From the NCBI RefSeq assembly GCF_006345805.1, contig NW_021837026.1:1-64000 (forward strand): a stretch of DNA of 64,000 nt, written 5' to 3'. Of this stretch, positions 2,041 through 51,804 are shown piece after piece. The stretch is from Octopus sinensis (taxonomy: Eukaryota). A program made the position numbers and the translations under genes. The notes beneath the pieces are model-generated. The model was given only the letters and a program-made list of their open reading frames with translations, was not told where the DNA came from and made no database searches. Each line of letters opens with the position of its first letter. Position 1 is the stretch's first letter.

Positions 2041-2069
2041 ATTATTATTATTATTATTATTATTATAGC

Positions 2070-29710: not shown

Positions 29711-29725
29711 CTATAATAATAAAAA

Positions 29726-30386
29726 GGCAATCTTTCGTCTCTAGTAGACCTTTCCGAAAAAATTTTTTTTGTTTTACATATGGGCTTGCGGGAAATTTTG
29801 AAGTAATGAGAGCGAAAGAGACTAAGAGAAAGCCATTTTTATGACGAGGGAAGTTCTTTTGAAGTTACCGTGCATGGCAAGCATTGATGTACATGTGTGT
29901 GTGTGTGTTTGATGAGGTGTGGGAGACAGACAGTATGTTGTGTAAGTGAAGTGCTTCTGTTAGTGTGTGTGAAAGAAAGAGATAACTGAAATTTTTTACT
30001 TGGTGTATGTGTATATGTATGTATATTACTTGAAAAGTTCCCGCAAGCCCATATGTAAAAAAAAAATTTTTTTACGGTGTGGTGTGGTGTTGAAGGAGTG
30101 TGACGGAGCGGGAGGGAGCGGAAGTGGGTCTTGCAGGGCGCATGCGCCGGCGGAAGCTGAAGTGACAGACAGAACGCACGTGCGGCATTGACCAAGCCAG
30201 ACAGACTTGAGAACGACGCCAACACGACAAGAGGCTAGCAAGTTGGCTGAAGGCGAATCCGACTTCATCTCCTCAGGTAAGACCAAATTACACTTCTAAT
30301 TCTTTCCTTGTTCTGTTACGCTCCTTTCACCACACGTATTACATAGGGAAATCGACGTAAAGTTCTACTAGAGACGAAAGATCGCC
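29726..30386. mobile_element. GG-terminal TIR element (661 bp) with GC-rich core
   Basis: 23-bp TIR GGC(A/G)ATCTTTCGTCTCTAGTAGA; absent from the paralogous site at 1790-2066. Confidence 0.8.
30100..30283 (+). promoter_or_regulatory. Candidate promoter, first exon and splice donor inside the TIR element
   Basis: GCGGAAGT, GCGCATGCGC (30138-30147), CACGTG, then CAG|GTAAGA at 30276/30277. Function is inferred. Confidence 0.45.
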
Positions 30387-30639
30387 AATAATAATAGTGT
30401 TGATGAGAATAATCTTTTGTACTTTAGACACGAGTTCAGGAAATTGGCGGGAGAAGCGGACGTCGCTTCCATGGAACAATGTGCGCTAATGTTTCTTGTT
30501 TGTTTTTACCTCGAAAGGATGAAAGCCAAATTCTACCTGGATGGGATTTGAACTTTTAGAGTGAAGACGGACGAAATGCTGTTATGCATTTTGTTCGGCA
30601 TGTGAACGATTCTGCTAGTATAACGTATTATTGCATATG

Positions 30640-30819
30640 TATTGGGTTGTCCGGAAAGTTCGTGCCGATTTTTGAAGGAAAGAAAAAGGTCAATAAATAC
30701 TTGCCAATACATTTTTAATCAACCAAATATGAACCGTTTTGTTGCACAATGCGTCTCCATCTTTCCTTTAACTTGAAAATACCCTCTTCCCAGAATTGAG
30801 GTGGTTTCATGCCAAAGAA
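30640..30819 (-). mobile_element. Mariner 3' remnant (duplicate of 1362-1541)
   Basis: TATTGGGTTGTCCGGAAAGTTCGTGCC TIR; reverse-complement identity to the first copy. Confidence 0.8.
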
Positions 30820-31402
30820 AAAAGGTAATGGAGGAAAACAGGTTAGAATTTAGAGAAATGTAGAAACGCTTCATCTATGTACAGAATGTTGTGAAAGTTT
30901 CAAAGCCTCAATGGAATCTGACCCCTGAAAACATAGACATTAAATGGATGACAATGTTGATGTAAGATTTGCAATGTTGAATTACTATGTCGTTTAACGA
31001 TTCTCTTTATCTCATGCTTCTTTTTTTCTACTTCAGAATATCACATCATGTTGACGTTAAAGAAATCTCTTCATTCAGATGTACCTCTGATATTTTGATT
31101 GACTTTCATCAATTAAAGGAAGACCATATATTCATAAGGCACATTCATCAACGCATCAATGACAAACGATAAGAAAATATTTCTTCTACGATGGAATTAA
31201 GAGCAACTTTTTTGTTGCCTTCACTGTTTGGAATGTAAAAAAGGTGATTGCTTGGATAAATTTACAAAAGTTTTAACTGTTTACATCTGCCATTTTAGAT
31301 GTTAAGCAAGAACATAGTGTTAAATTATTCTCTGAAAATACTGACACAACTGAACACAAATACATTCATAGAAATGAAAAAATCATTATCGTTGGGATAC
31401 GT

Positions 31403-32221
31403 ATGAGAAGTTTTTATCTTATAATGAATGATTTAAGAAAACCAAACAAACCTGATTCAGGTGAGAGGCCATATCACTGTGATATCTGTGGTAAATTATT
31501 CACTGAAGAAAGAGTCTTGACCAAACACAAATGCATTGATACAGGAGAGAAACCACATCATTGTGATGTCTGTGGTAAATCATTCTCTCAAAGTAGTTCT
31601 TTGACTAGGCACGTACGTACACATACAGGAGAAAAACCATATCATTGTGATATCTGTGGTGAATCATTTTCTGAAAGTGGCCACGTGACTATGCACAGGC
31701 GTACTCATACAGATGAGAAGCCATATCATTGCAATATCTGTGGTAAATCATTCTCTCGAAGTAGTGACTTGTTTAGACACCAGCGTACACATACGGGAGA
31801 AAAACCATATCATTGTGATATCTGTGGTGAATCATTTTCTCAAAATAACTCTTTAACTTATCACAAACGTGTTCATACAGGTGAGAAGCCATATCATTGT
31901 AACATCTGTGGTAAATCTTTCTTTATAAATAGTAACTTAACAATACACAGACGTATTCATACAGGAGAGAGGCCATATCATTGTGATATCTGTGATAAAT
32001 CATTCTCTACCAATAGTCATTTGACTCGTCACAAATATATTCATACTGGAGAAAAACCATATCATTGTGATATCTGTGATAAATCATTCTGTAGGAATAG
32101 TGACTTGACTAAACATAAACGTATTCATACTGGAGAAAAACCATATCATTGTGATATCTGTGATAAACCATTCTCTAGGAATAGTGACTTGACTAAACAT
32201 AAACGTATCCATACTGGATAA
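31403..32221 (+). CDS. G6: C2H2 zinc-finger protein truncated by a nonsense codon (8 fingers plus 1 degenerate)
   Basis: 272-aa ORF with the conserved ATG at 31424. The stop is GGA TAA in a TGEKP linker; decayed fingers continue to the TQV* terminus at 32436. Confidence 0.8.
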
Positions 32222-32280
32222 AAACCATATAATTGTGATATCTGTGATAAATCATTCTCTACGAATAATCATTTGACTAA

Positions 32281-32433
<153 letters not shown>

Positions 32434-32882
32434 TAACTGTATCAATATCAAAATTTATTAGAACATGACAACAATTATGAATATTTTGTCTGCTAAAAGA
32501 CAGGGTTTATTCCTTTTCAAGCTTGACATTATCAACTTCAGTTTCTTGGATGTCAACATGAAATTCATGAATCACAACTTCAATATCATTTATATATCTA
32601 AATATATCAACACAGAGATGACCTTGATTTCTGAAGAGGATAGTGCTGGATTTTTGAGGAATTTGTTATGAGAGAATAAAGGAATGGGAATGAGGAATAA
32701 AAGTTTTAAGTGACATTGATTTTGTCTTTGTTGTGTTTTCATCATCATCCTCTAACATCCATTTTTAGCATCCGTCTTCTATGCAGGCTTTGATGGGAAA
32801 GTGTGACATGAGCTGGCAAGCCAGAGTGCTACTCCATGTTCCTGTCAGATTGGGCTTGGTTTCTTTGGCTCTATGCCCTTAA

Positions 32883-33104
32883 CCCTTTCAATACCAACCC
32901 AGCCAAAACCAGTTCTGGCTCTATAGCACAAATGTCTTGTTATCATAAATTTTGAATTAAAATCTTCCACCAAACCTTAGTCACAATTTATGTTCCTAAC
33001 ACTAGCTTAATGATAATGAAGTTATTTTACTAAATTCTTTGTTATATTTAAAATTAATTGAGAGAAACACAGAGCATCTCAACAGAAATATGGTAATGAA
33101 AGGG
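32883..33104. mobile_element. piggyBac-like MITE (same site as behind G2 and G4)
   Basis: TTAA|CCCTTTCAATACCA ... TGGTAATGAAAGGG|TTAA. Confidence 0.8.
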
Positions 33105-33544
33105 TTAAGATACATGGCGCATTTTATAAATATTCCTGTTCAAGAATCATAACAGTATCAAACAAGTAGTAGCGCTTTCAGTTGTGTATTTAATTTGATA
33201 TATGTATTTGTGTGAACATGATATCAGTCTGACAACTAAAATAATAGAAATCTTGTATTTTGAGTATTTTTTTCATATGAGGCAGAAGCATGGACTCCCT
33301 TCTACGAAGAAATAGAAAGACTGAAATTTTTTCGCATGTGGTGTCTGGAGCACAACATATGCAACAAAATGGCAAGATAAGACATTAAATGTAAAAATTT
33401 TAGTAAAATGTGATATGTCCAGTATCCAAGGCGTACGGATGAGAATTCAGTGCAGATGGGTGCAAGAGATGTTTTCCAAAGACGAAATGATCGCATTCCA
33501 AAAATTCTTCTGTAAGGCCAACAAGTGGCAGAGGAACTCGTCTG

Positions 33545-34420
33545 GTCCCCGTGCCGGTGGCACGTAAAGAGCACCATTCAAGCGTGGTCGCTGCCAGACT
33601 CCTCTGGCACATAAAAGGCACCCGCTACACTCACGGAGTGGTTGGTGTTAGGAAGAGCAGCTAGATGTGATGTCTTGGGAAAGCCATTGCCTAGATCCAT
33701 CTGTATGGCGTAAAATGTGTCACGATGCCATGTGAAGAATTTGAGTTGATGAAAATGAACAGTAGCAGGCCTATATCCTCCAACCAACAGACACATTCGC
33801 TCAATCCTTTGCACAATCGACGTCCCCATTGCAACTTCATGGCAAAATCCATTTCTGGACTTGGATTCCAGCAATTGCCAGGACCGCTGGACTGACTCCT
33901 GTGCAGGTGGCAAGTGAAGAAACATCATTTCGACCCTGTGCTTGAGGAGACATATTGAGTCAAGTACACCAACATCAAAATCAATGGAAACTGCAACTGT
34001 GATCCCTGTGCCAGTGGAATGTAAAAAGCACCATCCGAACGTGGCCGATGCCAGCACCGCTTTGACCGGCTTCCTTGCCGGTGGCATGTAAAATGCACCG
34101 AACCGATCGTGGCCGTTGACAGCCTCGCCTGGGATATGGTGGCCGTTGCCACTGCTGCCCCGACTGGCCTCGTGCCGGTGGCACATAAAAATCACCATCT
34201 TATCGTGGCCGTTGCCAGCACCGCCCCGACTGGCCTCCGTGCCGGTGGCACATAAAGAGCCCCCACTACAATCATGGAGTGGTTGGCGTTAGGAAGGGCA
34301 TCCAGCTGTAGAATCACTGACAGATCAGGTTGGGCCTGGCACAGCCTTCTGGCTTCCCAGTCCCCAGTTGAACCGTCCAACCCATGCCAGCATGGAAAAT
34401 GGACGTTAAATGATGATGAT
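33545..34420 (-). mobile_element. SINE family D cluster (GTGCCACCGGCAC subrepeats, CATCATC end)
   Basis: Multi-copy; GGAAGGGCATCCAGCTGTAGAA and GGACGTTAAATGATGATG. Confidence 0.7.
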
Positions 34421-34611
34421 GTCACATATGTACACATACAGGAGAGAAGCCATATCAGTGCAATATCTGTGGTGACAGACGACTTATAGACAGGAATTTC
34501 ACTGAGCAAAGAAAGGAATTCCGATTAGTCACAAGGGAGGGCTGAGAATTCAGATGGCCATTTGTGTTCACCCCAAACGTGTGCAGTTGATGAGAGCGGG
34601 ATAAACAACAG

Positions 34612-34990
34612 GTGCAGGAGTGGCTGTGTGGTAAGTAGCTTGTTTACCAAACACATGATTTGGGTTCAGTCACACTGGGTGGCACCTGGGCAAGTGTCTT
34701 CTACTATAGCCCTGGGCTGACCAAAGCCTTGTGAGTGGATTTAGTAGATGGAAACTGAAAGAAGCCCGTCGTATATATGTATGTATGCGTGTGTGTGTCT
34801 GTGTTTGTCACCCTAGCATTGCTTGAGAACCGATGCTGGTGTGTTTGTGTCCCTGTTACTTATCGGTTTGGCAAAAGGAGACCGATAGAATAAGTACTGG
34901 GCTTACAAAAAGAATAAGTCCTGGGGTCGAGTTCCTCGATTAAAGGCGGTGCTCCAGCACGGCCGCGGTCAAATGACTGAAACAAGTAAA
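34612..34990 (+). mobile_element. SINE family A
   Basis: Full-length forward copy. Confidence 0.85.
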
Positions 34991-35019
34991 AGAGTAACAC
35001 TTTTCTTCCTGGTTAATTT

Positions 35020-35560
35020 TACGTATATATTTCTTTCTTGCCCACAAGGGGCTAAACATAGAGGGAACAAACAAGGACAAAAGGATTATGTCGATTACAT
35101 CGACCCCAGTGCGAAACTGGTACTTTATTTGTCGACCCCGAAGGGATGAAAGGCAAAGTTGACCTCGGCGGAATTTGAACTCAGAACGTAACAACAGACG
35201 AAATACTGGTAAGCGTTTCGCCCGGCGCACTAACGTGTCTGCCAGCTTGCCGCTTTTTTAAATTTTACATATAGCTTAAGGTGCAGGCCCAGTGGTTAGA
35301 GCGTCGAGCTTACGATCATGAGGTTGTGAGTTCAAATCCCGGACCGGGCTGCGTGTTGTGTTCTTGAGCAAGACACTTTATTTCACGTTGCTGCAGAAAT
35401 GAGTTGCGACATCACAGTTGCCAAGTTGTATCAGCCCCTTTGGCTTACCACTTGGATAACACTAGCATGCATGGGTGATTGCTGGTCTTCCATAAACAAT
35501 CTTTCTAGGTGCAATCCCATGGTCTGTGTCGTGACTGAAGGGGTCTCAAGATCCACAACA
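35020..35560. mobile_element. SINE B (-) followed by SINE C (+), duplicate of 23575-24330
   Basis: Same order and junction sequence as the 23.6-24.3 kb copy. Confidence 0.75.
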
Positions 35561-35744
35561 TGCTGGGTCATGATGAGTACTCCAGATAACGTCTCAGTGG
35601 ATAGAATGCCACATCACATGTGGGATATTCAAAGTGTAATGAGCTTTAATGATAACAAAGGGGGGGGGGAATGACACTGTGTATATTTCAATGGAAGCAT
35701 CCTTACCACAACTGAATGGATGGTTATTAAACAATAGAGGGGCA

Positions 35745-37435
35745 GTCATCGTTAATCGCCTGGAAGCCTTTCAGCGACGTGCAACCAAGAGAATACCCTC
35801 CATCAGGCATTTGCCATATTCTGAACGCCTTACTTACCTGGGCAAGGATACATTGAAACTCCGATATTTGGCAGACACTCATAAAATTTTTAACCACTAA
35901 AAATAACTCTGAGCACCTTTTCAAACTCCATCCGTCTAACACCCGTGGACATGTTTATAAAGTCAGAAAACAGCACAGCTCCCATGACTTTTAGAAACAT
36001 TTTAGAATACCCTCCATAAGGCATTTACCATATTCTGAACGCCTTACTTCCCTGGGCAAGGATACATTGAAACTCCGACGTCTGGCAGCTGACTTGGCAG
36101 ACACCCATAAAATTATTAACCATCTTATTAACATTAACTCTGAACACTTTTTCAAACTCCACCTGTCTAACACCTGTGAACATGTTTACAAAGTCAGAAA
36201 AAAAGCATATCTCCCATGACTTTCAGAAACATTTTTTCACGCTAGGAGTTGCTGAAGTATAGAACAAAACGCCGGCATCAGTTGTTAGTTGTCGAGCACT
36301 GCATCCTTCAAAACTTCCATGCTTTCTGAGATTTGCCAACACTACACCTGATTTTCTCCCCTCCATACACACACATGCATGTATCTGACTCATACACTGT
36401 TAGCTTTCCAGACATTTATACATTACTGCATATGCTTTATACGCACTTTTGACAAGGTGTGGTGCACCTGACACTGTATACAATACCCTCCATCAGGCAT
36501 TTGCCATATTCTAAATGCCTTACTTCCCTGGGCACGGACACATTGAAACTCCGACGTCTGGCAGCTGACTTGGCGGACGCCCATAAAATTATTAACCATC
36601 TTATTAACAATAATTCTGAGCACCTTTTCAAACTCCACCTGTCTAACACCTGTGAACATGTTTACAAAGTCAGAAAACAGCACAGTTCCCATGACTTTCG
36701 GAAACATATTTTCACGCTAAGAGTTGCTGAAGTATAGAACAAAACGCCAGCATCAGTTGTTAGTTGTCGGAGCACTGCATCCTTCAAAACTTCCATGCTT
36801 CCTGAGATTCGCCAACACTACACCTGACTTTCTCCCCTCCATACACACACATGCATGTATCTGACTCATACACTGTTAGCTTTCCAGACATTTATACATT
36901 ACTGCATATGCTTTATACGCACTTTTGACAAGGTGTGGTGCACCTGACACTGTATACAATACCCTCCATCAGGCATTTGCCATATTCTAAATGCCTTACT
37001 TCCCTGGGCACGGACACATTGAAACTCCGACGTCTGGCAGCTGACTTGGCGGACGCCCATAAAATTATTAACCATCTTATTAACAATAATTCTGAGCACC
37101 TTTTCAAACTCCACCTGTCTAACACCTGTGAACATGTTTACAAAGTCAGAAAACAGCACAGTTCCCATGACTTTCGGAAACATATTTTCACGCTAAGAGT
37201 TGCTGAAGTATAGAACAAAACGCCAGCATCAGTTGTTAGTTGTCGGAGCACTGCATCCTTCAAAACTTCCATGCTTCCTGAGATTCGCCAACACTACACC
37301 TGACTTTCTCCCCTCCATACACACGCAAGCATGTATCTGACTCAAACACTGTTCGCTTCCCAGACATTTGTACATTTCTGCATATGCTTTATACGCACTT
37401 TTGACAAGTTGTGGTGCACCTGAGCACTGTATACA
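35745..37435 (+). mobile_element. CR1-clade 3' ends in tandem, including a 476-bp near-exact duplication
   Basis: ORF-track proteins at 36423/36899, 36437/36913 and 36459/36935 are identical and offset by 476 bp. Confidence 0.85.
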
Positions 37436-38618
37436 ATAATTTCATTATTATTATTAGATCAGGGTGAAGTGTGGAGGAATGATAGTGACCAGAATGTAAG
37501 GAAGTGAAGGACCGGAAGTGGAAAAACACGATGTCATGTATCTTATTTTCTCTTGCTTTTCCCTCTGGCTGAGTAGACCTGTATCTCCCCTGTAGCAGCA
37601 GATGTGGGTGACATGCAACATATTTACATCTATACATATGTTGGCACAAACCGAAAAGATCCTTATCCATTTTATAGTGGAGCGACTATCATTGTGGAGC
37701 ACTGACTTAATGACACACTATAATTTCATCAGTATGAAAGAAAGAGGGGTCACCATCTTGTTCGTAACAACAAGAAAATAGAAGTTCACGAGACGTTTGT
37801 AATAAGTCATAACTTTTATCATTGGAGGTAATGTGTTAACATACAAGGTTAACTGAAGGAAAGCTTAAAACATTATATGAATACCGTAAATTCTCGAGTA
37901 TAATCCACACTTTTTTCCCCAAAATTTAAAGGTCAAAATCCCTAGTGCATACTATATACGAGGTTAAAAATGAAAAACATTTTCTAAGCAATGTTCGAGT
38001 CTCTGCTGTCCGGCAATGTTTATTTGATGCATTTTGTGATGTTGGGAGTGAAAATACGTTAAGCTAAGCCTGAAAGCAATGAAGTCATAAAAGAATCATC
38101 CATAACTTGCAGTAAGCAACATTTATTAAAATAAAAGCATTCAGAACATAGAATAACAAGTAAAAAAAACAATTTGCAAACCTATTTACATTCCCATATA
38201 ACAGTTAAGAACATCACCATTATTGTATTACGCATGCACGGAAGTGTTTGTTCGACTGGGTGCTGCTGGCTTAATTATGCATGGATTGTGCTTAATAGTT
38301 TAGCGCTAATAGTTCATCCTGCTGAATTTTTGGAAAGCATTCACATTTCATTTGAAAAACATGTCCTACCCATCTTCACTGAATCCTCATCAACATGCTT
38401 TGAATACTGGACATATCACATTTTTCTAAGATTTTTACATTCGATGTCTTATTTTGCCATTTGGTTGCATATGCTGTGGTGCATACACCACATTTGAAAG
38501 GTTTGGAGATTTTCTATTTCCCTATCGAAGTGAGTCCCTGCTTCTGCCCCAGACATAAACACACTCAAAATACGAGACTTGTATACACTTATTCTAGCTA
38601 TCAGACTGACATCCTGTC

Positions 38619-38653
<35 letters not shown>

Positions 38654-39585
38654 TTATATCAAATTACAAAATAAGAAAATGGAGGAACAGATTCATTTCA
38701 ATCATCAACTTCCAGATAATACCAATTCATATAATTTATTAATTAATTATTTAGGAACATCCAGATCAAACAGAATAAAACAGTACACATCAATGAGTAA
38801 GATAATACCATAAGAACAATACATATGAAGAAATATAAATATAAAAATATAAAATATATGTTCTTATGGTATTATATTACTCATTGATGTGTACTGTTTT
38901 ATTCTGTTTGATTTGGATGTTCCTAAATAATTAGTTAATAAATTGTATGAACTGGTATTATCTGGAAGTTGATGATTTATAGAAATCTACTCCTTCATTT
39001 TCTTATTTTGTATTATGAATTTGAGGTAAAACATTTTACCTTTGCCCATATAATACATGAATTAATTGCATTGCAATTCTGAACATTTATGTATTAGCCT
39101 TTCTGGGTACTTTACTGGCAGTATATTGGATAAATGATATCCCATAGTGGGTTACTCTCATAATGTACATAATTCCTAATCTCTCAAATATAGAACTACA
39201 CAATCCAGGTCTGACTGGAACATAGAGAAGCACTCTGGCTTGCCAGCACCTGTCACACTTTCCCATCCATGCCTGGATGGTAAAGGATGATGGAGATGAT
39301 GATGATGATCAAAACACAACAAAGACAAAATCAATGTCAATTAAAACTTTTATTCCTTATTCCCATTCCTTTATTCTCTCATAACAAATTCCTCAAAAGT
39401 CCAGCACAATCCTCTTCAGAAGTCAAAGTCATCTCTGTGTTGATATATTTAGATATATAAATGATATTGAAGTTGTGATTCATGAATTTCATGTTGACAT
39501 CCAAGAAACTGTATTTGATAATGTCAAGCTTGAAGAGGAATATACCCTGTCTTTTAGCAGACAAAATATTCATAATTGTTGTCCT

Positions 39586-39998
39586 CATCATCATTTAGCA
39601 TCCGCTTTCCATGCTAGCATGGGTTGGATGGTTCAACTGGGGTCTGGAAAGCCAGAAGACTGCACCAGGCCCAGTCTGATGTGGCAATGCCCTTCCTAAC
39701 GCCAACCACTCCGTGAGTGTAGCGGGTGCTTTTTACGTGCCACCGGCACGGGGGCCAGGCGAGACTGGCAAACGGCCATGATGGGATGGTGCTTTTTACG
39801 TGCCACCAGCACTGGTATCAAAGCTACAATTTCCATTGATGTTGATCGATTTCGATTTTCATTCTGATTCTCACTTGCCTCAACAGGTCTTCACATGTAG
39901 AGTTTTGTGTCTCTAGAAGGAAAGGTATGCATAAGTGGACTGGCTACATCCCAGGTAGAGACCATGGTTTATGGTCTCACTTGTCCTGCCGGGTTGTA
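39586..39998 (+). mobile_element. SINE family D inserted in the 3' UTR of G7
   Basis: Interrupts ATTGTTGTCCT|...|TGTAATAAATTTTG, which is contiguous behind G5. Confidence 0.75.
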
Positions 39999-40020
39999 AT
40001 AAATTTTGATATTGGTACGG

Positions 40021-41241
40021 TTACACGTGTGTATGAATACTCAGATGTGTACTTAAGTGGCGTTTTTGAGAGAATGACTCACCGCAAATATCACAATGAT
40101 ATGGTTTTTCACCTGTATGAATACGTTTGTGTTTAGGCAAATCACTACTGTGGGAGAATGATTTACCACAGATATCACACTGATATGGTTTCTCTCCTGT
40201 ATGACTACGTTTGTGACTGATTAAATTGCTATTATCAGAAAATGACTTACCACAGATATCACACTGATATGGTTTTTCCCCAGTATGAATACGTTTGTGA
40301 CCAGACAAATGACTACTTCTTGAGAATGATTTACCACAGATATTACAATGATATGGTTTCTCTCCTGTATGAATACGTAAGTGTCTGGTTAAAGGGCTAT
40401 TATCAGAGAATGATTCACCACAGATATCACAATGATATGGCTTCTCACCTGTATGAATACGTTTGTGCCCACTTAATGTAGAATGCTGGGAAAATGATTT
40501 ACCACAGATATCACAATGATATGGCTTCTCTCCTGTATGAATATGTAGGTGTCTGGTTAAATGGCTATTTTCAGAGAATGATTCACCACAGATATCACAA
40601 TGATATGGCTTCTCTCCTGTATGAATACGTCTGTGCCCATTTAAAGTAGAATTATGGGAAAATGATTTACCACAGATATCACACTGATATGGTTTTTCCC
40701 CAGTATGAATACGTATATGACTAGTCAAATGACTATTTCTAGTGAATGATTTACCACAGATATCACAATGATATGGTTTCTCACCCGTATGAATACGTTT
40801 GTGATCAATTAAAATGTTACTTCTAGAAAATGATTTACCACAAATATTACAATGATGTGGCTTTTCTCCTGTATGTGTACGTTTGTGTGTAGGTAAGTCA
40901 CCACTGGTAGAGAATGATTTACCACAGATATCACACTGATATGGTTTCTCTCCTGTATGAGTACGTTTGTGTTTAGGTAAGTCAGTACTTCGAGAAAATG
41001 ATTTACCACAGATATCACACTGATGCGGCTTTTCCCCAGTATGAATAAATTTGTGACGAGTTAAAGTGCTATTTTCAGAAAATGATTTACTACAGATATC
41101 ACACTGATATGGTTTTTCTCCAGTATGAACACGTCTGTGCCTACTTAAATTACCACTTTTAGAGAATGACTTACCACAAATATCACAGTGATATGGCTTC
41201 TCTCTTTTATCAGAGATTTTTGCTTTAGTTGAATTATTCAT
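40021..41241 (-). CDS. G7: C2H2 zinc-finger protein, 14 fingers
   Basis: Intact 406-aa [20 protein letters not shown]...IHTHV*. Confidence 0.93.
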
Positions 41242-42239
41242 TATGAAAGAATAATTTCGTTAAACATATCACAATGAAAGTATCTGTTTCATTTCTATGA
41301 ATGTTTGTGTTCAAATGCATCAGAGAATAATTGAATGTTATGTTACTTTCATTGGTGACCTTACTTAATATCTAAAACAGAAGATATAAATTGGTAAATG
41401 CTTTTGTAAAGTTACTCAAACTTAACCTGTAGGTTCATCATCTCTACATTCCATATGGTAAAGACAAAAAAAATGTTGCTGTTAATTCCATTGTCCAGAA
41501 GAAATATTTCCCCATCGTTCGTCGAAGATTTTATTTATGTAAAGATGTTGATGTATTGATGAATGTGCCTTATAAATATATGGTCTTCCTTTAATTGATG
41601 AACATCAATAAAAATATCAGACACACATCTGAATGAAGAAGTTTCTTTTAAATCAACATGGAATGATATCCTGAAATAGGAAAGAAATTCATTTCTATGA
41701 ATATATTTGTGTTGTTATTTTCAGAGAATAATTTAATGCTATGCTTCTTTCATCTGAGATTTTGCTTAATATCTAAATCAAGAGGTGACAATTGTCTATG
41801 CCTTTGTAAAGTTATCAAAGCTTAATTAACCTGTAAAGCAATCATCTCCTCTATATTCCAGACAGCAAAGACTTCAAATTGTTGCTGTTAATTCCATCGC
41901 CCAGAAGAAGTATTTTGCTGTTGTTTTACACAGATTTCATTTATATGTTGAGTTTGATGTATTGATGCTCCTTATAAATATATCATCTTCCTTTCGTTAA
42001 TGGAAGCTGATAAAAATACCAGAGGCACATCTGAATGAAGAAATTTCTTTAACGTCAACATGATGTGATATTCTGAAATAAAAAAAGAAGCAGTGAGATA
42101 AAGAGAATCATTAAATGGCATAGTAATTCAACATTGCAAATCTTACAACATCAACACTGTCATCCATTTAATGTCTATGCTTACACGAATTGGAGTTTAT
42201 TCGGGTACTGAAACTTTTACAACATTCTACACTTTTTAC

Positions 42240-42632
42240 ACTTTTACTTGTTTCAGTCATGTGACTGCAGCCATGCTGGAGCACCGCCTTTAGTCAAGCA
42301 AATCGAATCCAGGACTTATTCTTTATAAGCCTAGTACTTATTTATCAGTCTCTTTTGCCCAACCGCTAAGTTACGGGGACGTAAACACACCAGCATCGGT
42401 TGTCAAGCAATGCCAGAGAGACAAACACAGACACACAAACATACACACACATATATATACATATATACGACAGGCTTCTTTCAGTTTCCGTCTACCAAAT
42501 CCACTCACAAGGCATTGGTCGACCCAAGGCTATAGTAGAACACACTTGCCCAAGGTGCCACGCAGTGGGATTGAATTTGGTACCAAGTGGTTGGTAAGCA
42601 AGCTACTTACTACACAGCCACTCCTACGCCTA
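42240..42632 (-). mobile_element. SINE family A
   Basis: Full-length reverse copy. Confidence 0.85.
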
Positions 42633-42689
42633 TTCATTATTTTGAATTAGGAGTGGCTGTGTGGTATTTAAACAACAACAAAAAACAAA

Positions 42690-43085
42690 AGTAGACACCC
42701 ATAAAATTATCAACCATTTTACAAACAATAACTCTGAGCACCTTTTCAAACTCCATCTGTCTAACACCCGTGGATATGTTTACAAAGTCAGAAAACAGCA
42801 CAGCTCCCATGACTTTCGGAAACATTTTTTCATGCTAAGAGTTGCTGAAGCATGGAACAAACTGCCGGCATCAGTTGTTAGTTGTCGGAGCACTGCATCC
42901 TTCAAAACTTCCATGCTTCCTGAGATTCGCCAACACTACACCTGATTTTCTCCCCTCCATACACACAGGCTAACATGTATCTGACTCATACACTGTTCAC
43001 TTCCCAGACATTTGTACATTACTGCATATGCTTTATATGCACTTTCTGACAAGTTGTGGTGCATCTGAGCACTGTATACAATAAT
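42690..43085 (+). mobile_element. CR1-clade LINE 3' end
   Basis: DTHKIINHFTNNNSEHLFKLHLSNTRGYVYKVRKQ...RVAEAWNKLPASVV. Confidence 0.8.
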
Positions 43086-43292
43086 TTCATGATTATTATA
43101 AATAATTTGAGAAATGCAGGGAAATCTATATACAGAATAGGCGCAGGAGCATTCTACAGCTGGATGCCCTTCCTGTTGCCAATCCTGACCTCTTCCCAAG
43201 TAAAATGATATTCCACCAAGTTCAAACATATTTACACGGAATATTGCAAAGAAAGGACATCGCTTGCATGATGGTGACACTCACTGACAAGC

Positions 43293-45400
43293 GGCGATCC
43301 TTCGGTATAGGTTCTGGAAGTGGCTTTGTTTACATTTCTGGAGATAACAGAAACCCTTTTCTCCCACCCCTAACACAAACCTTAACCATGACCCCCCCCT
43401 TATATATAAAAAAAACAACACTTTTTTTAAATGTATCTGGTACTTCCGGTGGTTAATATAGGGCGTAACAAATATCAGAAAATCAAAAAAAAAATGTGTG
43501 TAATAGGTGTAAAACAACTGCCTATGAACGAATATGAAAAAAAAAAATTCGCGCACGCGAAAGGGGGGTGGGGGAGAGGCCTCGGAAAATTCACATCGGG
43601 AAGTTCCGAAAGCGTCTGAGGAGCTGACCCGGGCACCAAAACAAAAAAAAATAGTGTAATATGTGTAAAACAACTTGCTCTAAACGAATATGACACAAAA
43701 AAATGCGCTCTCGCGAAAGAGGGGTGGGGGAGAGGCCTCGGAATATTTATATCGGGAATTTCCGAAAGCGTCTGAACCGGGCACAAAAACAAAAACAAAA
43801 ACAGCGTAATAGGTGTAAAACAACTTGCTCTAAACGACTATCATGAAAAAAATGCGTGCTCGCGAAAGGGGGGTGGGGGAGAGGCTTTGGAAATTTCACA
43901 TCTTCAGTCCACGGCCTTTAAACTAAGAAAAAATAGTGTAATTGGTGTAAAACTACTTGTTCTAAACGAGTATCAAGAACACACACTCACACATGAATCA
44001 TAAACTCCGTATTTCGCAAAAAAAAAAAATAAAGAGAAGAAATTCTGGAAAAAGTGAAGAAATGTTGGATCTCATTCCTTGGTTAAAGCTATTTTAAACA
44101 TTAAATTTATGCTTTTCTTTGAAATAGTTCAGATATATGCAATTCTTCTCACTTATTAAGATGCATTTATCAGAAAAAAAGAGACAGAAAAATTATTATT
44201 TTGTGTCAATCCTTCCCTAATTATCCTTTATTAATTAGTTTTGGCGTGTATTTTTTTCCCAAATTTATTTTTTCACCTTTACAACACTGTTTAGTAAAGC
44301 AACTATTTATCTTTATAATTTGCATATTTGACTTATTAATCAAAATTCTCTACATGTAATATATACTAAGTAATGCAACCTTCATTTATGTGTTCCGTTC
44401 TGTATTATGCATGCGTGACTGTTTGTATGTAAGTGTGTTTAACTGTGCACATGAATGTGAATATTAAAGAACATATTTATTTACTATGATTGTTATTTTC
44501 AGAACAAATAAATCTTTTGGCTGTTATGTTATTGATGTTATTATTATTGCTAGTTAAAGGGTGGTGACTTGGCTGAATATTTTGAGTCTTGTAGTATGTA
44601 GTTGTGTTAGTCAATATTCTGAGTTCAAATCCAACTCATTTCTTTATCATCATTATCGATGGACCACTCAAAGAGGTATGTATACATTATCATTTTCGTA
44701 ACATAATTTCTGTAGTATTTCAAGATGTTTCTGACACGTATTTTGATTCACATGGTGGAGATCCAACATTTCTTCACTTTTTCCAGAATTTCTTCTCTTT
44801 ATTTTATTTTTTTGCGAAATACGGAGTTTATGATTCATGTGTGAGTGTGTGTTCTTGATACTCGTTTAGAACAAGTAGTTTTACACCAATTACACTATTT
44901 TTTCTTAGTTTAAAGGCCGTGGACTGAAGATGGGAAATTTCCGAAGCCTCTCCCCCACCCCCCTTTCGCGAGCGCGCATTTTTTTCATGATAGTCGTTTA
45001 GAGCAAGTTGTTTTACACCTATTACGCTGTTTTTGTTTTTGTGCCCGGTTCAGACGCTTTCGGAAATTCCCGATATAAATATTCCGAGGACTCTCCCCCA
45101 CCCCTCTTTCTCGAGAGCGCATTTTTTTTTCATATTCGTTTAGAGCAAGTTGTTTTACACATATTACACTGTTTTTTTTTTGTTTTGGTGCCCGGGTCAG
45201 CCCCTCAGACGCTTTCGGAACTTCCCGATGTGAATTTTCCGAGGCCTCTCCCCCACCCCCCTTTCGCGTGCGCGAATTTTTTTTTTCATATTCGTTCATA
45301 GGAAGTTGTTTTACACCTATTACACACATTTTTTTTTTGATTTTCTGATATTTGTTACGCCCTATATTAACCCTTCCGGTACCTGTACCGAAGTTACGCC
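43293..45400. mobile_element. GGCG-terminal MITE hosting a nested foldback element
   Basis: Left end GGCGATCCTTCGGTATAGGTTCTGGAAG; right end reverse complement GGCGTAACTTCGGTACAGGTACCGGAAG. A related left end is at 55196. Confidence 0.7.
43451..45372. mobile_element. Foldback element, TIRs of about 620 bp, 8-bp TSD (Merlin-like)
   Basis: TSD CTTCCGGT at 43443-43450 and 45373-45380. Termini GGTTAATATAGGG / CCCTATATTAACC. TIRs 43451-44073 and 44758-45372 contain about 120-bp subrepeats; the AT-rich interior has no ORF. Confidence 0.9.
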
Positions 45401-45680
45401 AATTTTTTTAAACAAAGTAAATAAAACAAAAATACAAAGTAAGGATCGACTGGTCACGACTAGCTAGCGCGGATGCGCGACTACGCGCGCCGAGACCCCT
45501 CTTCTTAAATAGTACTCTTACATTCGCGAGTGCCCGTTCTCCGTATTTTATTTTTCAGTATAAAATATTTAAAAAATAGATTAATCTGTCTAATTTCATC
45601 CATACTTTGTGTATTCTGGATATATTTCCCATTTCGTAACTTTTTTTTGACAAGTAAGGGTTATCTTGGTGAGGTGTGCC

Positions 45681-45898
45681 GTACTACTAGCGAACAGTGG
45701 TCCCGGTGCGCGCACTCGCGTATCCGTTCTACCTAGTCATATGTAGTGAATCATGCAACGACTTTTTAACCCTAATCTTAGTTTGTTTACAAAAATAATG
45801 TATTTACTTGGTTTAAAAAATTGTAGGATCGACTACTTACGACTAGCTAGCGCGGATGTACGAGTGCGCGCACCGGGACCACTGTTCGCTAGTAGTAC
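45681..45898. mobile_element. CpG-rich MITE with a TIR of about 45 bp
   Basis: GTACTACTAGCGAACAGTGGTCCCGGTGCGCGCACTCG and its reverse complement; related to 15790-16650 and 45440-45520. Confidence 0.75.
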
Positions 45899-46147
45899 CT
45901 TATCATTATTGGTATTATCATCATCATTATAGCCTTAAAGAAAATCTTTGTCAACTTACCGTATTCAGATACAAACAACGAGTCAGTGATCGGTAATTAA
46001 GCACCTTAATTAATTAATTAAGGCAAGTTATATCCCTTTATAGGGTTGTAGTACTTCAATTTTCTATGACTGGTCCGTTTCGTTCCGGTGTCTTCTTTGT
46101 CCCATTCCGTCAACGATTTTACCTTCAAGGTAATATAGAATATATAC

Positions 46148-46310
46148 ACTCACATACTCTAATCTACGACCGTTTCCAGCGCACGAACTGGACCCCGTCG
46201 CAGACACCGAAAGAAATAAGACATCTTTGACTTATATCTTCCTGATGTGACGTCAGGCCGTTGCACTTCCGATCCGTTTCTGACGTCATTTTCTCTCCTG
46301 TCCAATCATT
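46148..46310. promoter_or_regulatory. Candidate promoter core in the G7/G8 divergent spacer
   Basis: TGACGTCA at 46248 and 46281, ACTTCCG at 46265, CCAAT at 46302; minus-strand donor-like GTGAGT at 46153-46148. Confidence 0.5.
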
Positions 46311-46365
46311 GTCCTTCCTTCACACTTCTCTCTCATCTAAAGAACAATGCTTGGATACCTTTTGG

Positions 46366-46771
46366 GGATCTTTTCGGTTTGACCGGCAGTTTTTTAAAAT
46401 AATTTCCACGTAACTAAACACTTTTAAACTTCGTATACTGGTAGAATGTGTTCATAAAACATCTTTTTCTCTTGGCTTTATTGAGAAAATTCTGTAGTTT
46501 GTAAGCTATTTGTTGGTTTTTTGTCTTCAATTTCTGCAATTTCAACCAATCAATGGCATCTATTGAGGTGAAAACATTCTGTGCCGTATGAATGTCCCTC
46601 GTTTAAGAAACAGATTGGGTTTATTTACATTCCTGAAGAAAAAAAGATACCCTTTCCCCCCACCCCTAACCCTAAAACAGATTGAAATGCAATCGATACT
46701 AGGGTCATAATTATGGGTGACAATTTCATATGACACCATTTGGAAAACTGCCGGTCAAACGGAAAAGATCC
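46366..46771. mobile_element. GGATC-TIR MITE
   Basis: Both TIRs present; no TSD match. Confidence 0.85.
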
Positions 46772-47136
46772 GGTGCTTGTGCCTAAAATTGAGAAGAATA
46801 TATGGTTAGGTAAAGGGAGATAATTAGTCTTTGATGTCTTATTTCATGAGACGCATGCGCATTGGACGTGGTTCCTACTTGATGTTGACTTCCGTGTCAA
46901 AGGTCCTTTGAATGAATTTCTTTTAATCAGCTGATAATAATAATACGTTTATAATACTTAAAATACGTACTTATAATGCATTTCTCAACTGACATATACA
47001 CACATATATAAACAACACAGTCCTTTATGAAACATTTGCGTAAGTATTAAACAATGAAAAAATTCAACGTTTTTTAATTCTGGAGACTTTCGGTTTTTGG
47101 CGCCTGAATTCTTTGTGTCTTTTCTGTGTTTTATGA

Positions 47137-47795
47137 ATGAGAGATGTCCTTGATTTGTGCGGGATTTGGCTGCTATATCTAGCTATGGGAGAGAGATGTC
47201 CTTGATTTGTGCGGGATTTGGCTGCTATTTCTAACTATGGAAGAGCGATGACTATGAATTGTATTAGATTTGGCTGCTATTTCTAGCTATGGAAGAGACA
47301 TCTTTTGGCGCCACAATTCTTTGTGTCTTTTCTGTGTTTTACGAATGAGAGATGTCCTTGATTTGTGCGGGATTTGGCTGCTATTTCTAGCAACGGAAGA
47401 GATTCAATGATTTGTGCGATATTTGGTTGACATTTGTAAATGTGAAAGAAAAATGCTTTCGATTTGTGCGGGATTTGGCTGCTGTTTCTAACTATGGAAG
47501 AGATATTCAATGATTTGTACGATATTTGGTTGATATTTCCAGCTGTGAAAGAAAAATGTTTTTGATTTGTGCGGGATTTGACTGCTATTTCTAGCGATGG
47601 GAGACAGATATCTATGAATTGTGCGGGATTTGCTGCTTTTTCTAGCTATGGGAGACAGATGACTATGAATTGTGCGAGATTTGGCTGTTATTTCTAGCTA
47701 TGGGAGACAGATGTCTATGAATTGTGCGGGATTTGGCTGCTTTTTCTAGCTATGGGAGAGAGATATCCTTGATTTATGCAGGATTTGGCTGCTAT
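47137..47795. repeat. Degenerate minisatellite, unit about 52 bp
   Basis: Unit approximately GATTTGTGCGGGATTTGGCTGCTATTTCTAGCTATGGGAGAGAGATGTCCTT. Confidence 0.8.
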
Positions 47796-48011
47796 GGAAG
47801 CTACCTTCTGCCCTCTCCGTAGTTGCATGTTTTAGTTTGAGAAATATTCTCAAATACACTCCAACCACTGAAATGTTCGGAAACCGATACTTTATTTTAA
47901 TTTATCGATTGTTTCTCAGTATTACTATCGATCTAAATGGTAATGTGTTTCCTCATAACTTTCAGAAAGTACCTTTTCATATTCTGTGGATAAGGATTAT
48001 ATAGGAATTTG

Positions 48012-51795: not shown

Positions 51796-51804
51796 TTAAG
51801 GAAG

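What the first reader, a model, noticed from the sequence alone, without database searches (positions are those of the whole stretch)
29726..31036. TIR element carrying a promoter-like core and splice donor positioned to drive G6
Seen: within 23-bp TIRs lies a CpG-rich core with GCGGAAGT (ETS-like), GCGCATGCGC (NRF1-like palindrome) and CACGTG (E-box), about 130 bp of exon-like sequence, then CAG|GTAAGA. The conserved G6 acceptor lies 760 bp downstream on the same strand. The element is absent from the G1/G2 duplicate. Inference: a Pack-type transposon that captured or supplies a promoter and first exon, rewiring one paralog after duplication.
Basis: partly seen in the sequence, partly recalled or inferred. 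Interest (0 to 1): 0.75.

Follow-up and report, generated by a model that had tools for sequence, protein, structure and literature searches.

The report
Octopus transposon carrying a promoter-like insert
A small DNA transposon between two zinc-finger genes of Octopus sinensis carries about 270 bases that look like a gene's promoter, first exon and splice donor pointing at one gene, but the available data cannot show that the gene uses them.

Summary
The window is an Octopus sinensis C2H2 zinc-finger cluster. The element is 661 bp (29726-30386), not 29726-31036. It has 31-nt outer TIRs (28/31), longer arms (77/83 once the insert is removed), and an 8-bp target duplication inside an (ATA)n microsatellite.

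A second family member at 48012-48271 has a perfect 8-bp duplication (GGAATTTG) and lacks the core. So the core (about 30078-30347) is a foreign insert in the right arm, bounded by 2-nt GG microhomology. GG termini plus 8-bp duplications fit Merlin; the hAT end motif YARNG is not met.

The insert holds ETS, NRF1 and E-box motifs (0 of 5000 composition-matched shuffles), an ATG-free stretch, and a 5' splice site in the top 0.3% of the window. G6's acceptor lies 760 nt downstream and is conserved in all nine paralogs. The G1/G2 duplicate has the empty site.

Not shown: that G6 uses this promoter or donor. A rival native promoter patch and donor lie in the upstream region shared by G1 and G6. Insertion after duplication versus excision from G1/G2 is unresolved, and no parental copy could be searched for.

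Verdict: a Pack-TIR-type element, a new member of a known kind; its function is plausible but untested.

The parts
29718..29725 (.). Left copy of the 8-bp target-site duplication (AATAAAAA), inside an (ATA)n microsatellite
   Evidence: It matches the right copy AATAATAA at 7 of 8 positions. This is weak on its own because of the microsatellite context. The family's 8-bp duplication is proven by element 2.
29726..29756 (+). Left outer terminal inverted repeat, starting 5'-GGCAATC
   Evidence: 31 nt, 90% complementary to 30356-30386; 17-mer core found only at the two termini, 0.01 expected.
29757..29807 (+). Inner part of the left long arm (A/T run plus TTTTACATATGGGCTTGCGGGAA)
   Evidence: 49 nt, 88% complementary to 30025-30073. 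The same motif occurs in both arms of element 2.
29808..30024 (.). Non-palindromic centre of the element (217 bp, contains (GT)n); origin unknown
   Evidence: Apart from microsatellite matches it has no other copy in the window.
30025..30077 (-). Inner part of the right long arm, ending ...TTTTTTTACGG at the cargo junction
30078..30347 (+). Foreign insert (cargo) of about 270 bp in the right long arm. The junctions are ambiguous by 2 nt (GG microhomology).
   Evidence: Element 2 reads ...TCGGAAATCGACG... uninterrupted at this point. With the cargo removed in silico the two arms align at 77/83. The cargo is unique in the window and absent from about 102 kb of other octopus loci. There is no Rfam match.
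30118..30182 (+). Transcription-factor motif cluster: ETS GCGGAAGT (30118), NRF1 palindrome GCGCATGCGC (30138), second CGGAAG (30151), E-box CACGTG (30177)
   Evidence: The triple cluster occurred in 0 of 200 window shuffles and 0 of 5000 shuffles of the cargo itself. An exact NRF1 site occurred in 1 of 5000 cargo shuffles.
30183..30276 (+). Exon-like, ATG-free stretch between the motif cluster and the donor (putative non-coding first exon; TSS unknown)
   Evidence: Read from the sequence. There is no ATG between 30145 and 30276. Its role as an exon is inferred, not shown.
30274..30282 (+). 5' splice-site consensus CAG|GTAAGA
   Evidence: 11.2 bits with a generic metazoan PWM. Only 22 of 7473 GT sites in the window score as high (top 0.3%).
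30348..30386 (-). Right subterminal sequence and outer TIR (GAAATCGACGTAAAGTTCTACTAGAGACGAAAGATCGCC)
30387..30394 (.). Right copy of the target-site duplication (AATAATAA)
30445..30470 (+). Rival native promoter candidate: GGCGGGAGAAGCGGACGTCGCTTCC (ETS-like plus CRE-like palindrome), shared with G1 at 1711-1745
   Evidence: It is present only in G1 and G6. The G1 version has an intact CGGAAG.
30822..30849 (+). Rival donors in the shared region: AAG|GTAATG (GT at 30825, 7.1 bits, inside a G6-specific 17-nt insert) and CAG|GTTAGA (homologous to G1's CAG|GTAAGA at 1356, 11.2 bits)
   Evidence: The T at position +3 is derived in G6; G1, G3 and G4 have A.
31021..31036 (+). Polypyrimidine tract and acceptor AG of G6's main exon
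   Evidence: Conserved in all nine paralogs.
31403..32221 (+). G6 zinc-finger ORF (272 aa; family start codon at 31424; nine intact C2H2 fingers), ended by a GAA>TAA change and followed by decayed fingers
   Evidence: A deposited gene model has its CDS starting at 31403.
48012..48271 (.). Element 2: second family member, a 260-bp near-perfect palindrome without cargo, flanked by a perfect 8-bp duplication GGAATTTG (48004-48011 / 48272-48279)
   Evidence: (92% self-complementary over 274 nt).
1795..2053 (-). tRNA-derived SINE occupying the same (ATA)n tract at the paralogous G1/G2 site, which lacks element 1

Best explanation
Element 1 (29726-30386) is a non-autonomous cut-and-paste transposon (MITE). 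Its family makes 8-bp target duplications and has long arms starting 5'-GG. That is Merlin-like on structure; the hAT end motif is not met.

It sits in an (ATA)n tract in the 1.9-kb, otherwise TE-filled spacer between the head-to-head zinc-finger paralogs G5 and G6 of Octopus sinensis.

Its right arm has acquired about 270 bp of foreign DNA. The most likely route is repair of a break in the element with a template switch to another locus (filler DNA, the Pack-TIR route), since the junction shows 2-nt microhomology.

The acquired piece has the anatomy of a gene's 5' end copied from genomic DNA:
- an ETS/NRF1/E-box promoter cluster;
- about 95-150 nt of ATG-free first exon;
- a strong 5' splice site;
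- about 70 nt of AT-rich intron start.

It points at G6, whose family-conserved acceptor is 760 nt downstream. The proposed mechanism is that transcription starts just downstream of the motif cluster and splices 30276^31037, giving G6 a first exon and promoter that its closest paralog G1 lacks.

Shown: the transposon, its family, the cargo boundaries, the statistical excess of the motifs and donor, the orientation, the conserved acceptor, and the empty paralogous site.

Inferred: capture from a host gene (my estimate about 0.7), promoter activity and use of the 30276^31037 junction by G6 (about 0.35), and insertion after rather than before the G1/G6 duplication (about 0.6).
For: TIRs and their uniqueness.

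Second family member with a perfect 8-bp duplication and no cargo. The arms align at 77/83 once the cargo is removed, and the joined flanks match the G1 site.

Merlin features (TIR 24-462 bp, terminal GG, 8-9 bp duplication): PMC8101967. The hAT end motif YARNG is not met: PMC3014272.

Motif cluster: NRF1-like sites 5 observed against 0.2 expected. NRF1+ETS pairs 3 observed against 0 in 200 shuffles. Triple cluster in 0 of 5000 cargo shuffles. The other two NRF1+ETS pairs (46851/46888, 56170/56205) also lie upstream of + strand zinc-finger exons (G8, G9), so this is the promoter type of the cluster.

Donor in the top 0.3%. Acceptor conserved in 9 of 9 paralogs.

The rest of the G5-G6 spacer is recognisable repeats.

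G6 and G1 show omega 0.26 over the first 120 codons, so the genes were under constraint after duplication.

A deposited gene model starts its CDS at G6's first ATG.

The element is identical in all three assembled copies of the locus.

Pack-TIRs with a median 2-bp microhomology, including a captured 5'UTR, are documented in animals (PMC8277862).
Against: No transcript, CAGE or junction evidence could be accessed. The deposited gene models give CDS extents only and are chimeric (31403..50884).

No parental copy of the cargo and no further family copies could be sought. No DNA search of the octopus genome was available. There were 0 copies in about 102 kb of other octopus loci and only chance hits in metagenomes. 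'Cargo' therefore rests on one comparison.

The shared G1/G6 upstream region has its own ETS/CRE-like patch and a donor. G1 appears constrained without the element.

CpG o/e of the cargo is not higher than that of neighbouring TEs.

The cargo has no detectable homology to the other candidate promoters in the window.

The G6 ORF is truncated by two GAA>TAA changes.

The arms are 7-11% diverged while the G1/G6 flanks differ by 4.5%. That is compatible with the element predating the duplication.
Confidence: 0.45

Rival explanations
1. Inert passenger. The transposon and its promoter-like cargo are real, but G6 is transcribed like G1 from a native promoter in the 650-bp upstream region they share. 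That promoter would be the ETS/CRE-like patch at 30445-30470, with a donor about 190-210 nt upstream of the acceptor. The cargo would be silent, or at most a minor alternative start or enhancer. The element landed there because such transposons prefer open chromatin at gene 5' ends.
For: - A shared patch GGCGG(A/G)AGAA(T/G)CGGACGTCGCTTCC lies 60 bp from the insertion site, only in G1 and G6.
- G1 has CAG|GTAAGA (11.2 bits) 210 nt upstream of its acceptor. G6 keeps AAG|GTAATG (7.1 bits) nearby.
- The shared region is 95.5% identical, more than the synonymous sites (dS 0.108).
- G1 is under constraint without the element.
- The native G7/G8 promoter uses CRE+ETS+CCAAT motifs.
- Element 2 and several other MITEs also sit next to candidate promoters.
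Against: - In G6 the homologous strong donor carries a derived T at position +3 (GTTAGA), and the first ETS of the patch is mutated (CGGGAG). The native signals are weaker in G6 than in G1.
- The patch lacks the NRF1+ETS pair seen upstream of G8 and G9.
- The putative shared first exon would consist of a SINE fragment and a mariner-like remnant.
Confidence: 0.35
2. Reversed polarity. The element with its cargo was already present in the ancestor of the G1/G2 and G5/G6 pairs and was later lost from the G1/G2 copy by transposase excision or microsatellite-mediated deletion. On this reading G1/G2 lost a promoter, rather than G6 gaining one.
For: - The arms of the element differ by 7-11% and the duplication by 1 of 8, while the G1/G6 flanks differ by only 4.5%.
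- TIR elements in Octopus vulgaris had a main expansion at JC distance about 0.09 (PMC13282606).
- An excision footprint would be invisible in (ATA)n.
- The G1/G2 spacer has no NRF1+ETS module at all.
Against: - MITE copies can be born with imperfect arms; element 2's arms are also only 92% alike. Arm divergence is therefore a poor clock.
- The G1 ORF is open as far as the window shows and is under constraint, which is unexpected if it lost its only promoter.
- Simple insertion needs one event; presence followed by precise loss needs two.
Confidence: 0.3
3. Not captured host DNA. The 270-bp core would be a piece of another repeat, or of the family's own autonomous element (for example the transposase gene's promoter, 5'UTR and intron start kept in a deletion derivative). 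Its resemblance to a host promoter would then be incidental.
For: - Only one other family member was available for comparison.
- Other MITEs in the window have CpG-rich, GCGC-laden ends, and one carries an NRF1-like site in its TIR (15851).
- No parental gene was identified.
Against: - The segment lies inside the right long arm, between its outer and inner parts. It is not in the centre, where internal sequence of an autonomous element would be.
- It reads outward rather than into the element.
- It has no other copy in the window or in 102 kb of other octopus DNA.
- It has no TIRs, target duplication or poly-A of its own.
Confidence: 0.12
4. Chance: an inverted repeat and a few short motifs that happen to lie near a gene.
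For: The individual motifs are short, and CACGTG occurs 7 times in the window.
Against: - TIR core: 0.01 expected matches.
- A second copy has a perfect 8-bp duplication.
- The break in paralog homology falls exactly at both termini.
- The motif cluster occurred in 0 of 5000 shuffles.
Confidence: 0.02

Closest known systems
Pack-TIRs of metazoans (Tan et al. 2021, Nat Commun, PMC8277862) and Pack-TYPE / Pack-MULE / Pack-CACTA elements of plants (PMC8903248, PMC6379663)
   Same: A non-autonomous TIR transposon with intact ends and target duplication carries a short stretch of non-TE DNA. Breakpoint microhomology is about 2 bp (their median is 2 bp). The captured piece looks like a gene's 5' end; their frog example is a 291-bp 5'UTR captured by hAT-N8_XT. 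From my own knowledge, rice Pack-MULEs preferentially acquire GC-rich 5' gene fragments and insert at gene 5' ends (Jiang et al. 2011).
   Different: The defining parental copy has not been found here. The host family looks Merlin-like, whereas most animal Pack-TIRs are hAT or Tc1/mariner. The cargo combines promoter, non-coding exon and splice donor, aimed at a neighbouring gene's acceptor, rather than being a coding fragment. It is unknown whether it is single-copy or multicopy.
Merlin superfamily MITEs (Feschotte 2004; PMC8101967)
   Same: 8-bp target duplication, termini starting 5'-GG, long TIRs within the 24-462 bp range. Merlin families are annotated in Octopus vulgaris (PMC13282606).
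   Different: No autonomous partner or IS1595-type DDE transposase was linked to this family, so the assignment rests on structure only.
hAT-derived MITEs and filler-DNA-bearing hobo elements (PMC3014272)
   Same: 8-bp target duplication, and the habit of incorporating extraneous 'filler' DNA during gap repair.
   Different: The terminal motif YARNG is not met; the ends are GGCAA / GGCGA.
TE-derived alternative promoters and first exons of host genes (my own knowledge: for example LTR or MITE promoters driving neighbouring genes; Helitron-captured promoters in bats, Thomas et al. 2014)
   Same: A mobile element supplies a TSS and a splice donor that join a downstream host acceptor, changing the regulation of one paralog.
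   Different: Here the promoter would be passenger DNA in a cut-and-paste MITE rather than the element's own promoter. Its use is not demonstrated.

Membership tests
Pack-TIR / Pack-TYPE transposon | Terminal inverted repeats and a target-site duplication of a cut-and-paste family | tested here: met
   31-nt TIRs at 90%; 8-bp duplication matching at 7 of 8; family duplication length confirmed by element 2's perfect GGAATTTG.
Pack-TIR / Pack-TYPE transposon | Family members exist without the internal segment, so the segment is not part of the family consensus | tested here: met
   Element 2 (48012-48271) reads straight through the junction, and the arms align at 77/83 once the segment is removed. 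This is based on a single comparison copy.
Pack-TIR / Pack-TYPE transposon | The internal segment is a duplicate of a non-TE (genic) parental locus elsewhere in the genome | not testable with these tools
   No nucleotide search of the octopus genome was available. The segment is unique in the 64-kb window and in about 102 kb of other octopus loci.
Pack-TIR / Pack-TYPE transposon | Microhomology at capture breakpoints (supportive, not obligatory) | tested here: inconclusive
   There is a 2-nt GG ambiguity at the junction. It matches the published median of 2 bp, but 2 nt is easily chance.
Merlin superfamily | 8- or 9-bp target-site duplication | tested here: met
   Element 2: perfect 8 bp. Element 1: 8 bp with 1 mismatch. 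Criterion taken from PMC8101967.
Merlin superfamily | TIRs of 24-462 bp with a conserved terminal 5'-GG | tested here: met
   All four termini start GGC(A/G)ATC. The arms are 31 nt (outer) to about 130 nt (element 2).
Merlin superfamily | Autonomous partner encoding a DDE_Tnp_IS1595 transposase with the same TIRs | not testable with these tools
   There is no coding capacity in either copy, and no genome-wide search was possible.
hAT superfamily | 8-bp target-site duplication | tested here: met
hAT superfamily | Terminal motif 5'-YARNG | tested here: not met
   The termini are GGCAA / GGCGA. Criterion taken from PMC3014272.
MITE | Short (<800 bp), non-coding, with TIRs and a target duplication, present in many copies | tested here: inconclusive
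   Size, TIRs, duplication and lack of coding capacity are met. Only two copies were seen, and none in 102 kb of other octopus DNA.
RNA polymerase II promoter with first exon | Cluster of promoter-type transcription-factor motifs beyond chance | tested here: met
   ETS+NRF1+E-box within 65 nt occurred in 0 of 200 window shuffles and 0 of 5000 cargo shuffles. The same NRF1+ETS pairing occurs upstream of G8 and G9.
RNA polymerase II promoter with first exon | Mapped transcription start and a spliced junction from its donor to a downstream acceptor | not testable with these tools
   No RNA-seq or CAGE data were accessible. Deposited models give CDS extents only. The exact G6 ORF product is not on record in the assembly collection.
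RNA polymerase II promoter with first exon | Local escape from CpG depletion (CpG-island-like) | tested here: inconclusive
   G+C is 0.59 and CpG o/e 0.93 upstream of the donor, against 0.68 for the window. The flanking repeats and intron are equally undepleted at 0.9-1.5.

The most novel reading that the evidence does not exclude
The element is one copy of a mobile 'portable 5' end': a MITE that transposes together with a captured NRF1/ETS promoter, non-coding first exon and splice donor. On this reading it has landed upstream of several octopus C2H2 zinc-finger paralogs, and this would be a general mechanism by which tandem duplicates in the cephalopod zinc-finger expansion acquire different expression modules.
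Probability: 0.08. Interest if true: 0.75.

Novelty: new member of a known kind. Interest (0 to 1): 0.45.

Why it matters
Coleoid cephalopods have expanded C2H2 zinc-finger genes enormously. A recent study reports that even close tandem duplicates fall into different co-expression modules, and no mechanism was given (PMC12513265).

A cut-and-paste element that delivers a ready-made promoter, first exon and splice donor in front of one paralog would be a concrete, testable mechanism for such regulatory switching. It would also extend Pack-TIR-type capture, so far documented mostly for hAT and Tc1/mariner in vertebrates and insects, to a mollusc and probably to Merlin.

The test is simple: one splice junction and one TSS in existing octopus RNA data. 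If the junction is absent, the case is an ordinary MITE with filler DNA.

Tried and rejected
1. Protein homology searches with the G6 and G7 zinc-finger ORFs. They returned only vertebrate and other zinc-finger arrays, not even G7 itself. Candidate selection saturates on the repeated linker words.

2. Exact-product look-ups:
- G6 (272 aa), G4, and the GC-rich ORFs at 33578 and 59476 are not on record.
- The cluster look-up of eight ORF variants found nothing.
- G7 was found. That identified the assembly (GCA_006345805.1, Octopus sinensis; species name) and gave three assembled copies of the locus, 99.4-99.9% alike. All carry the element unchanged, so there is no presence/absence polymorphism.

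3. Sampling other octopus DNA through homologs of the Penelope-like ORF. About 102 kb from O. sinensis, O. vulgaris and an ENA assembly held no copy of the TIR, of element 2 or of the cargo; only (GT)n matches appeared.

4. A metagenome scan with the TIR pattern gave two chance hits with no similarity beyond the pattern.

5. Rfam on 28500-31500 found nothing above noise, so the cargo is not a known RNA gene.

6. Local alignment of the cargo to the other candidate promoters (G9, G7/G8, G3/G4, MITE family C) was not significant. I therefore rejected the idea that the cargo was copied from a promoter inside this window.

7. The idea that the inner inverted repeat is a nested MITE was rejected, because element 2 has the same inner motif in the same register.

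8. The idea that the NRF1-like site at 15851 marks the G3/G4 promoter was set aside. It lies in the long TIR of another MITE family.

9. Bidirectional use toward G5 has no support: there is no minus-strand donor of 7 bits or more between the cargo and G5's acceptor.
Full report
**What the window is.** The 64-kb window is low in G+C (37%) and packed with C2H2 zinc-finger arrays of 84-bp periodicity. The product of the ORF at 40021-41241 is on record in assembly GCA_006345805.1, on a chromosome and on two unplaced contigs, one of which has the window's own coordinates. A RefSeq-named Octopus sinensis protein maps to the same assembly. The window is therefore an Octopus sinensis zinc-finger cluster.

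I count nine genes in view, mostly in head-to-head pairs: G1(-)/G2(+), G3(-)/G4(+), G5(-)/G6(+), G7(-)/G8(+) and G9(+). All nine share the acceptor TTTTTCTAYTTCAG|AATATCAC and a start codon (MN[D/H/P]L...) about 390 nt inside that exon. Whatever lies upstream is therefore a non-coding 5' exon. Homology among distant paralogs starts only about 200 bp upstream of the acceptor, so the duplicated unit does not include a common first exon.

**Checking the observation.** The inverted repeat is real. The arms 29726-29756 and 30356-30386 are 31 nt long and 90% complementary. Their 17-nt core occurs nowhere else in the window, against 0.01 expected. The acceptor AG is at 31035-31036, which gives a 760-nt interval.

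The paralog comparison is clean. 30387-31355 matches the reverse complement of 839-1794 at 95.5%, and 29032-29725 matches the reverse complement of 2054-2696 at 84%. Both alignments stop exactly at the element's ends. Joining the two flanks reproduces the G1 site once a tRNA-derived SINE (1795-2053), inserted in the same (ATA)n tract, is taken out. So the element spans 29726-30386 (661 bp).

**The family and the cargo.** The decisive find was a second member at 48012-48271. It has the same termini (GGCAATCTT.CG..TCTAGTA....TTTACGTCGA) and the same inner motif (TTTTTTACATATGGG.TTG.GGG). It is a 92% perfect palindrome and has a perfect 8-bp target duplication, GGAATTTG. This settles three points.

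- The family makes 8-bp duplications. Element 1's flanks AATAAAAA / AATAATAA fit with one mismatch, but they are weak evidence on their own inside a microsatellite.
- The inner inverted repeat of element 1 (29759-29807 / 30025-30073) belongs to the family's long arms and is not a nested element.
- Where element 2 reads ...TCGGAAATCGACG..., element 1 reads ...ACGG[about 270 bp]GGGAAATCGACG.... The promoter-like core (about 30078-30347) is therefore an extra segment inside the right long arm, with a 2-nt GG ambiguity at the junction. With the segment removed in silico the two arms align at 77 of 83 positions.

The segment is unique in the window, has no Rfam match, and has no TIRs, target duplication or poly-A of its own.

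Terminal GG, 8-bp duplications and long TIRs are the published structural hallmarks of Merlin (PMC8101967). The hAT end motif YARNG (PMC3014272) is not met. Without a transposase the superfamily call remains structural.

**Is the cargo promoter-like beyond chance?** Yes.

- NRF1-like sites (one mismatch or fewer) number 5 in the window against 0.2 expected.
- NRF1+ETS pairs within 80 nt number 3, against none in 200 dinucleotide shuffles.
- The ETS+NRF1+E-box triple occurs once, in the cargo. It never appeared in 200 window shuffles or in 5000 shuffles of the cargo's own dinucleotides, so its G+C richness does not explain it.
- The donor scores 11.2 bits with a generic metazoan matrix, in the top 0.3% of all GT sites.
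- No ATG lies between the NRF1 site and the donor.
- After the donor the G+C content drops from 0.59 to 0.38, as at an exon-intron boundary.

The other two NRF1+ETS pairs lie at 46851/46888 and 56170/56205. They are respectively about 1.75 kb and about 0.25 kb upstream of the acceptors of G8 and G9. The G7/G8 spacer also has CRE-ETS-CRE-CCAAT at 46248-46305. The cargo thus carries the same kind of module that seems to serve as native promoter in this cluster, although it shows no alignable homology to those regions.

One claim needs softening. CpG o/e of the cargo (0.90) exceeds the window mean (0.68) but not the neighbouring repeats and intron (0.9-1.5). 'CpG island' is therefore not established.

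**Most likely mechanism.** The anatomy is that of a Pack-TIR: a non-autonomous TIR element that took up a short piece of genomic DNA, probably through break repair with template switching. Tan et al. found 370 such elements in 100 animal genomes. They report a median 2-bp breakpoint microhomology, and one frog example carries a 291-bp 5'UTR (PMC8277862).

Because the piece includes what looks like promoter, first exon, donor and intron start, it was copied from genomic DNA at a gene's 5' end, not from an mRNA. It points at G6. The remainder of the G5-G6 spacer (28975-30833) is recognisable repeats: a 700-bp repeat with several copies in the window, a SINE fragment and a mariner-like remnant. 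The proposal is that transcription initiates just downstream of the motif cluster and splices 30276^31037.

Three observations support this indirectly.
- A deposited gene model begins its CDS at G6's first ATG, 31403, although that model is chimeric with G8 and gives no UTRs.
- G6's first nine fingers are intact.
- G6 against G1 gives dN/dS 0.26 over the first 120 codons (7 synonymous and 8 non-synonymous changes). These genes were therefore not dead on arrival.

**Why I do not go further.** No transcript evidence was reachable, and there is a real rival. Sixty bases to the right of the element, in the region shared with G1, lies GGCGG(A/G)AGAA(T/G)CGGACGTCGCTTCC, an ETS-like plus CRE-like palindrome found only in G1 and G6. 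About 190-210 nt upstream of the acceptor there is a donor: CAG|GTAAGA (11.2 bits) in G1. In G6 the homologous site is CAG|GTTAGA, where the T at position +3 is derived because G1, G3 and G4 have A. A 17-nt G6-specific insert supplies AAG|GTAATG (7.1 bits).

The weakening of both native signals in G6 (the ETS mutated to CGGGAG, the donor's +3 A>T) is what one would expect after a switch to the new 5' end. But it amounts to two substitutions and cannot carry much weight.

History is also open. The arms differ by 7-11% while the G1/G6 flanks differ by 4.5%, and an excision footprint would be invisible in (ATA)n. The element could therefore predate the duplication and have been lost from G1/G2. 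MITE arms can be imperfect at birth (element 2's arms are 92% alike), so this clock is poor.

**Limits of the search for relatives.** Two protein searches with zinc-finger queries were swamped by vertebrate arrays. About 102 kb of other octopus DNA, reached through a Penelope-like ORF, held no copy of the family or of the cargo. A metagenome scan gave only chance matches. The three assembled copies of this locus are 99.4-99.9% identical and all carry the element unchanged. 'Cargo versus constant' therefore rests on one comparison copy, and the parental locus is unknown.

**Verdict.** The structure is solid: a Merlin-like MITE with a foreign, promoter-plus-first-exon-like insert, in sense orientation 650 bp upstream of G6's conserved acceptor, and absent from the closest duplicate. 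It is a new member of a known kind (Pack-TIR / Pack-TYPE). My estimates are about 0.7 for capture from a gene and about 0.35 for actual use by G6. One look at existing octopus RNA data and one genome BLAST would settle both.

Noticed in passing
48012-48271 (duplications at 48004-48011 and 48272-48279): A second, cargo-free member of the same transposon family. It is a 260-bp near-perfect palindrome with a perfect 8-bp duplication GGAATTTG and a TTAGGG-like centre. It lies about 330 bp upstream of G8's acceptor, inside G8's putative first intron.
   Followed up: yes
46248-46305 and 46851-46894: Candidate native bidirectional promoter of G7/G8: TGACGTCA, ACTTCCG, TGACGTCA and CCAAT, then an NRF1-like site plus ETS. 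The two halves are split by a 410-bp MITE (46366-46771).
   Followed up: partly
56170-56211: An NRF1-like site (GCACATGCGC), a palindromic GGAAG/CTTCC pair and ACCGGAAGT lie about 230 bp upstream of G9's acceptor, with no strong donor between them. G9 may be transcribed without the upstream intron.
   Followed up: partly
12988-13392, 15957-16367, 19074-19487, 46366-46771, 52746-53157 (plus fragments at 2747-2947, 51804-52380, 54290-54438): An abundant MITE family of about 410 bp with 28-nt TIRs, 88-92% alike between copies. Several copies sit next to candidate promoters.
   Followed up: partly
15796-15918 / 16511-16626; 45442-45524; 45825-45907: Another MITE family with long CpG-rich arms (CpG o/e 1.7-1.8). 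Its arms contain CACGTG and an NRF1-like GCGCATGTGC. One copy has the 410-bp MITE nested inside it. GC-rich palindromic 'promoter motifs' can therefore be TE-borne in this genome.
   Followed up: partly
1795-2053: A tRNA-derived SINE (on the minus strand, with an (ATT)n tail) is inserted in the same (ATA)n tract that holds element 1 in the paralogous copy. This microsatellite has been hit twice independently.
   Followed up: partly
1348-1356 versus 30841-30849: G1 has a consensus donor CAG|GTAAGA 210 nt upstream of its acceptor. G6 has CAG|GTTAGA at the homologous site (a derived change) plus a 17-nt insert creating AAG|GTAATG. This could be a shared native first-exon donor that is decaying in G6.
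   Followed up: partly
32209-32300 (G6), 28300-28440 (G5), 4900-5000 (G2): G6 ends with two independent GAA>TAA changes in finger linkers, followed by decayed fingers. G5 and G2 each have a frameshift within the array. These frameshifts could be real or long-read indel errors. G1 is open as far as the window start.
   Followed up: partly
31403-50884 (+): The deposited annotation joins G6's start codon to G8's stop in one gene (413 or 441 aa products on the two unplaced contigs). On the chromosome copy a 1146-aa model spans the region on the other strand. These look like chimeric models across tandem zinc-finger genes.
   Followed up: no
30645-30830 (and 1370-1555 in G1): A mariner-like terminal sequence (TTGGGTTGTCCGGAAAGTTCGTGCCGATTTTT) followed by a short remnant, shared by the G1 and G6 upstream regions.
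   Followed up: no
7607-8203 (-): An ORF fragment whose best homologs carry reverse-transcriptase domains (PF00078, PF26215). The closest named relatives are in Octopus vulgaris and O. sinensis at 72-75% identity. I read its C-terminal part as the GIY-YIG domain of a Penelope-like element, from the sequence and without a domain search.
   Followed up: partly
33578-34198, 55331-55723, 59476-60039: GC-rich (0.5-0.57) segments with related ORFs (shared ...LDALPN.NHS.SV.GAFYVP...), repeated at least three times. Their nature is unknown, and the exact products are not on record.
   Followed up: partly
47095-47795: Self-BLAST shows internally repeated, tandem-like sequence (shifted self-matches about 104 bp apart, 73-90% identical) between the G7/G8 promoter candidate and element 2.
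   Followed up: no
L001 versus L002/L003 (window about 36.5 kb region): The chromosome copy of the locus differs from the two unplaced contigs by an indel of about 460 bp and about 0.2-0.6% substitutions. The unplaced contigs look like alternative haplotigs of the same locus.
   Followed up: partly
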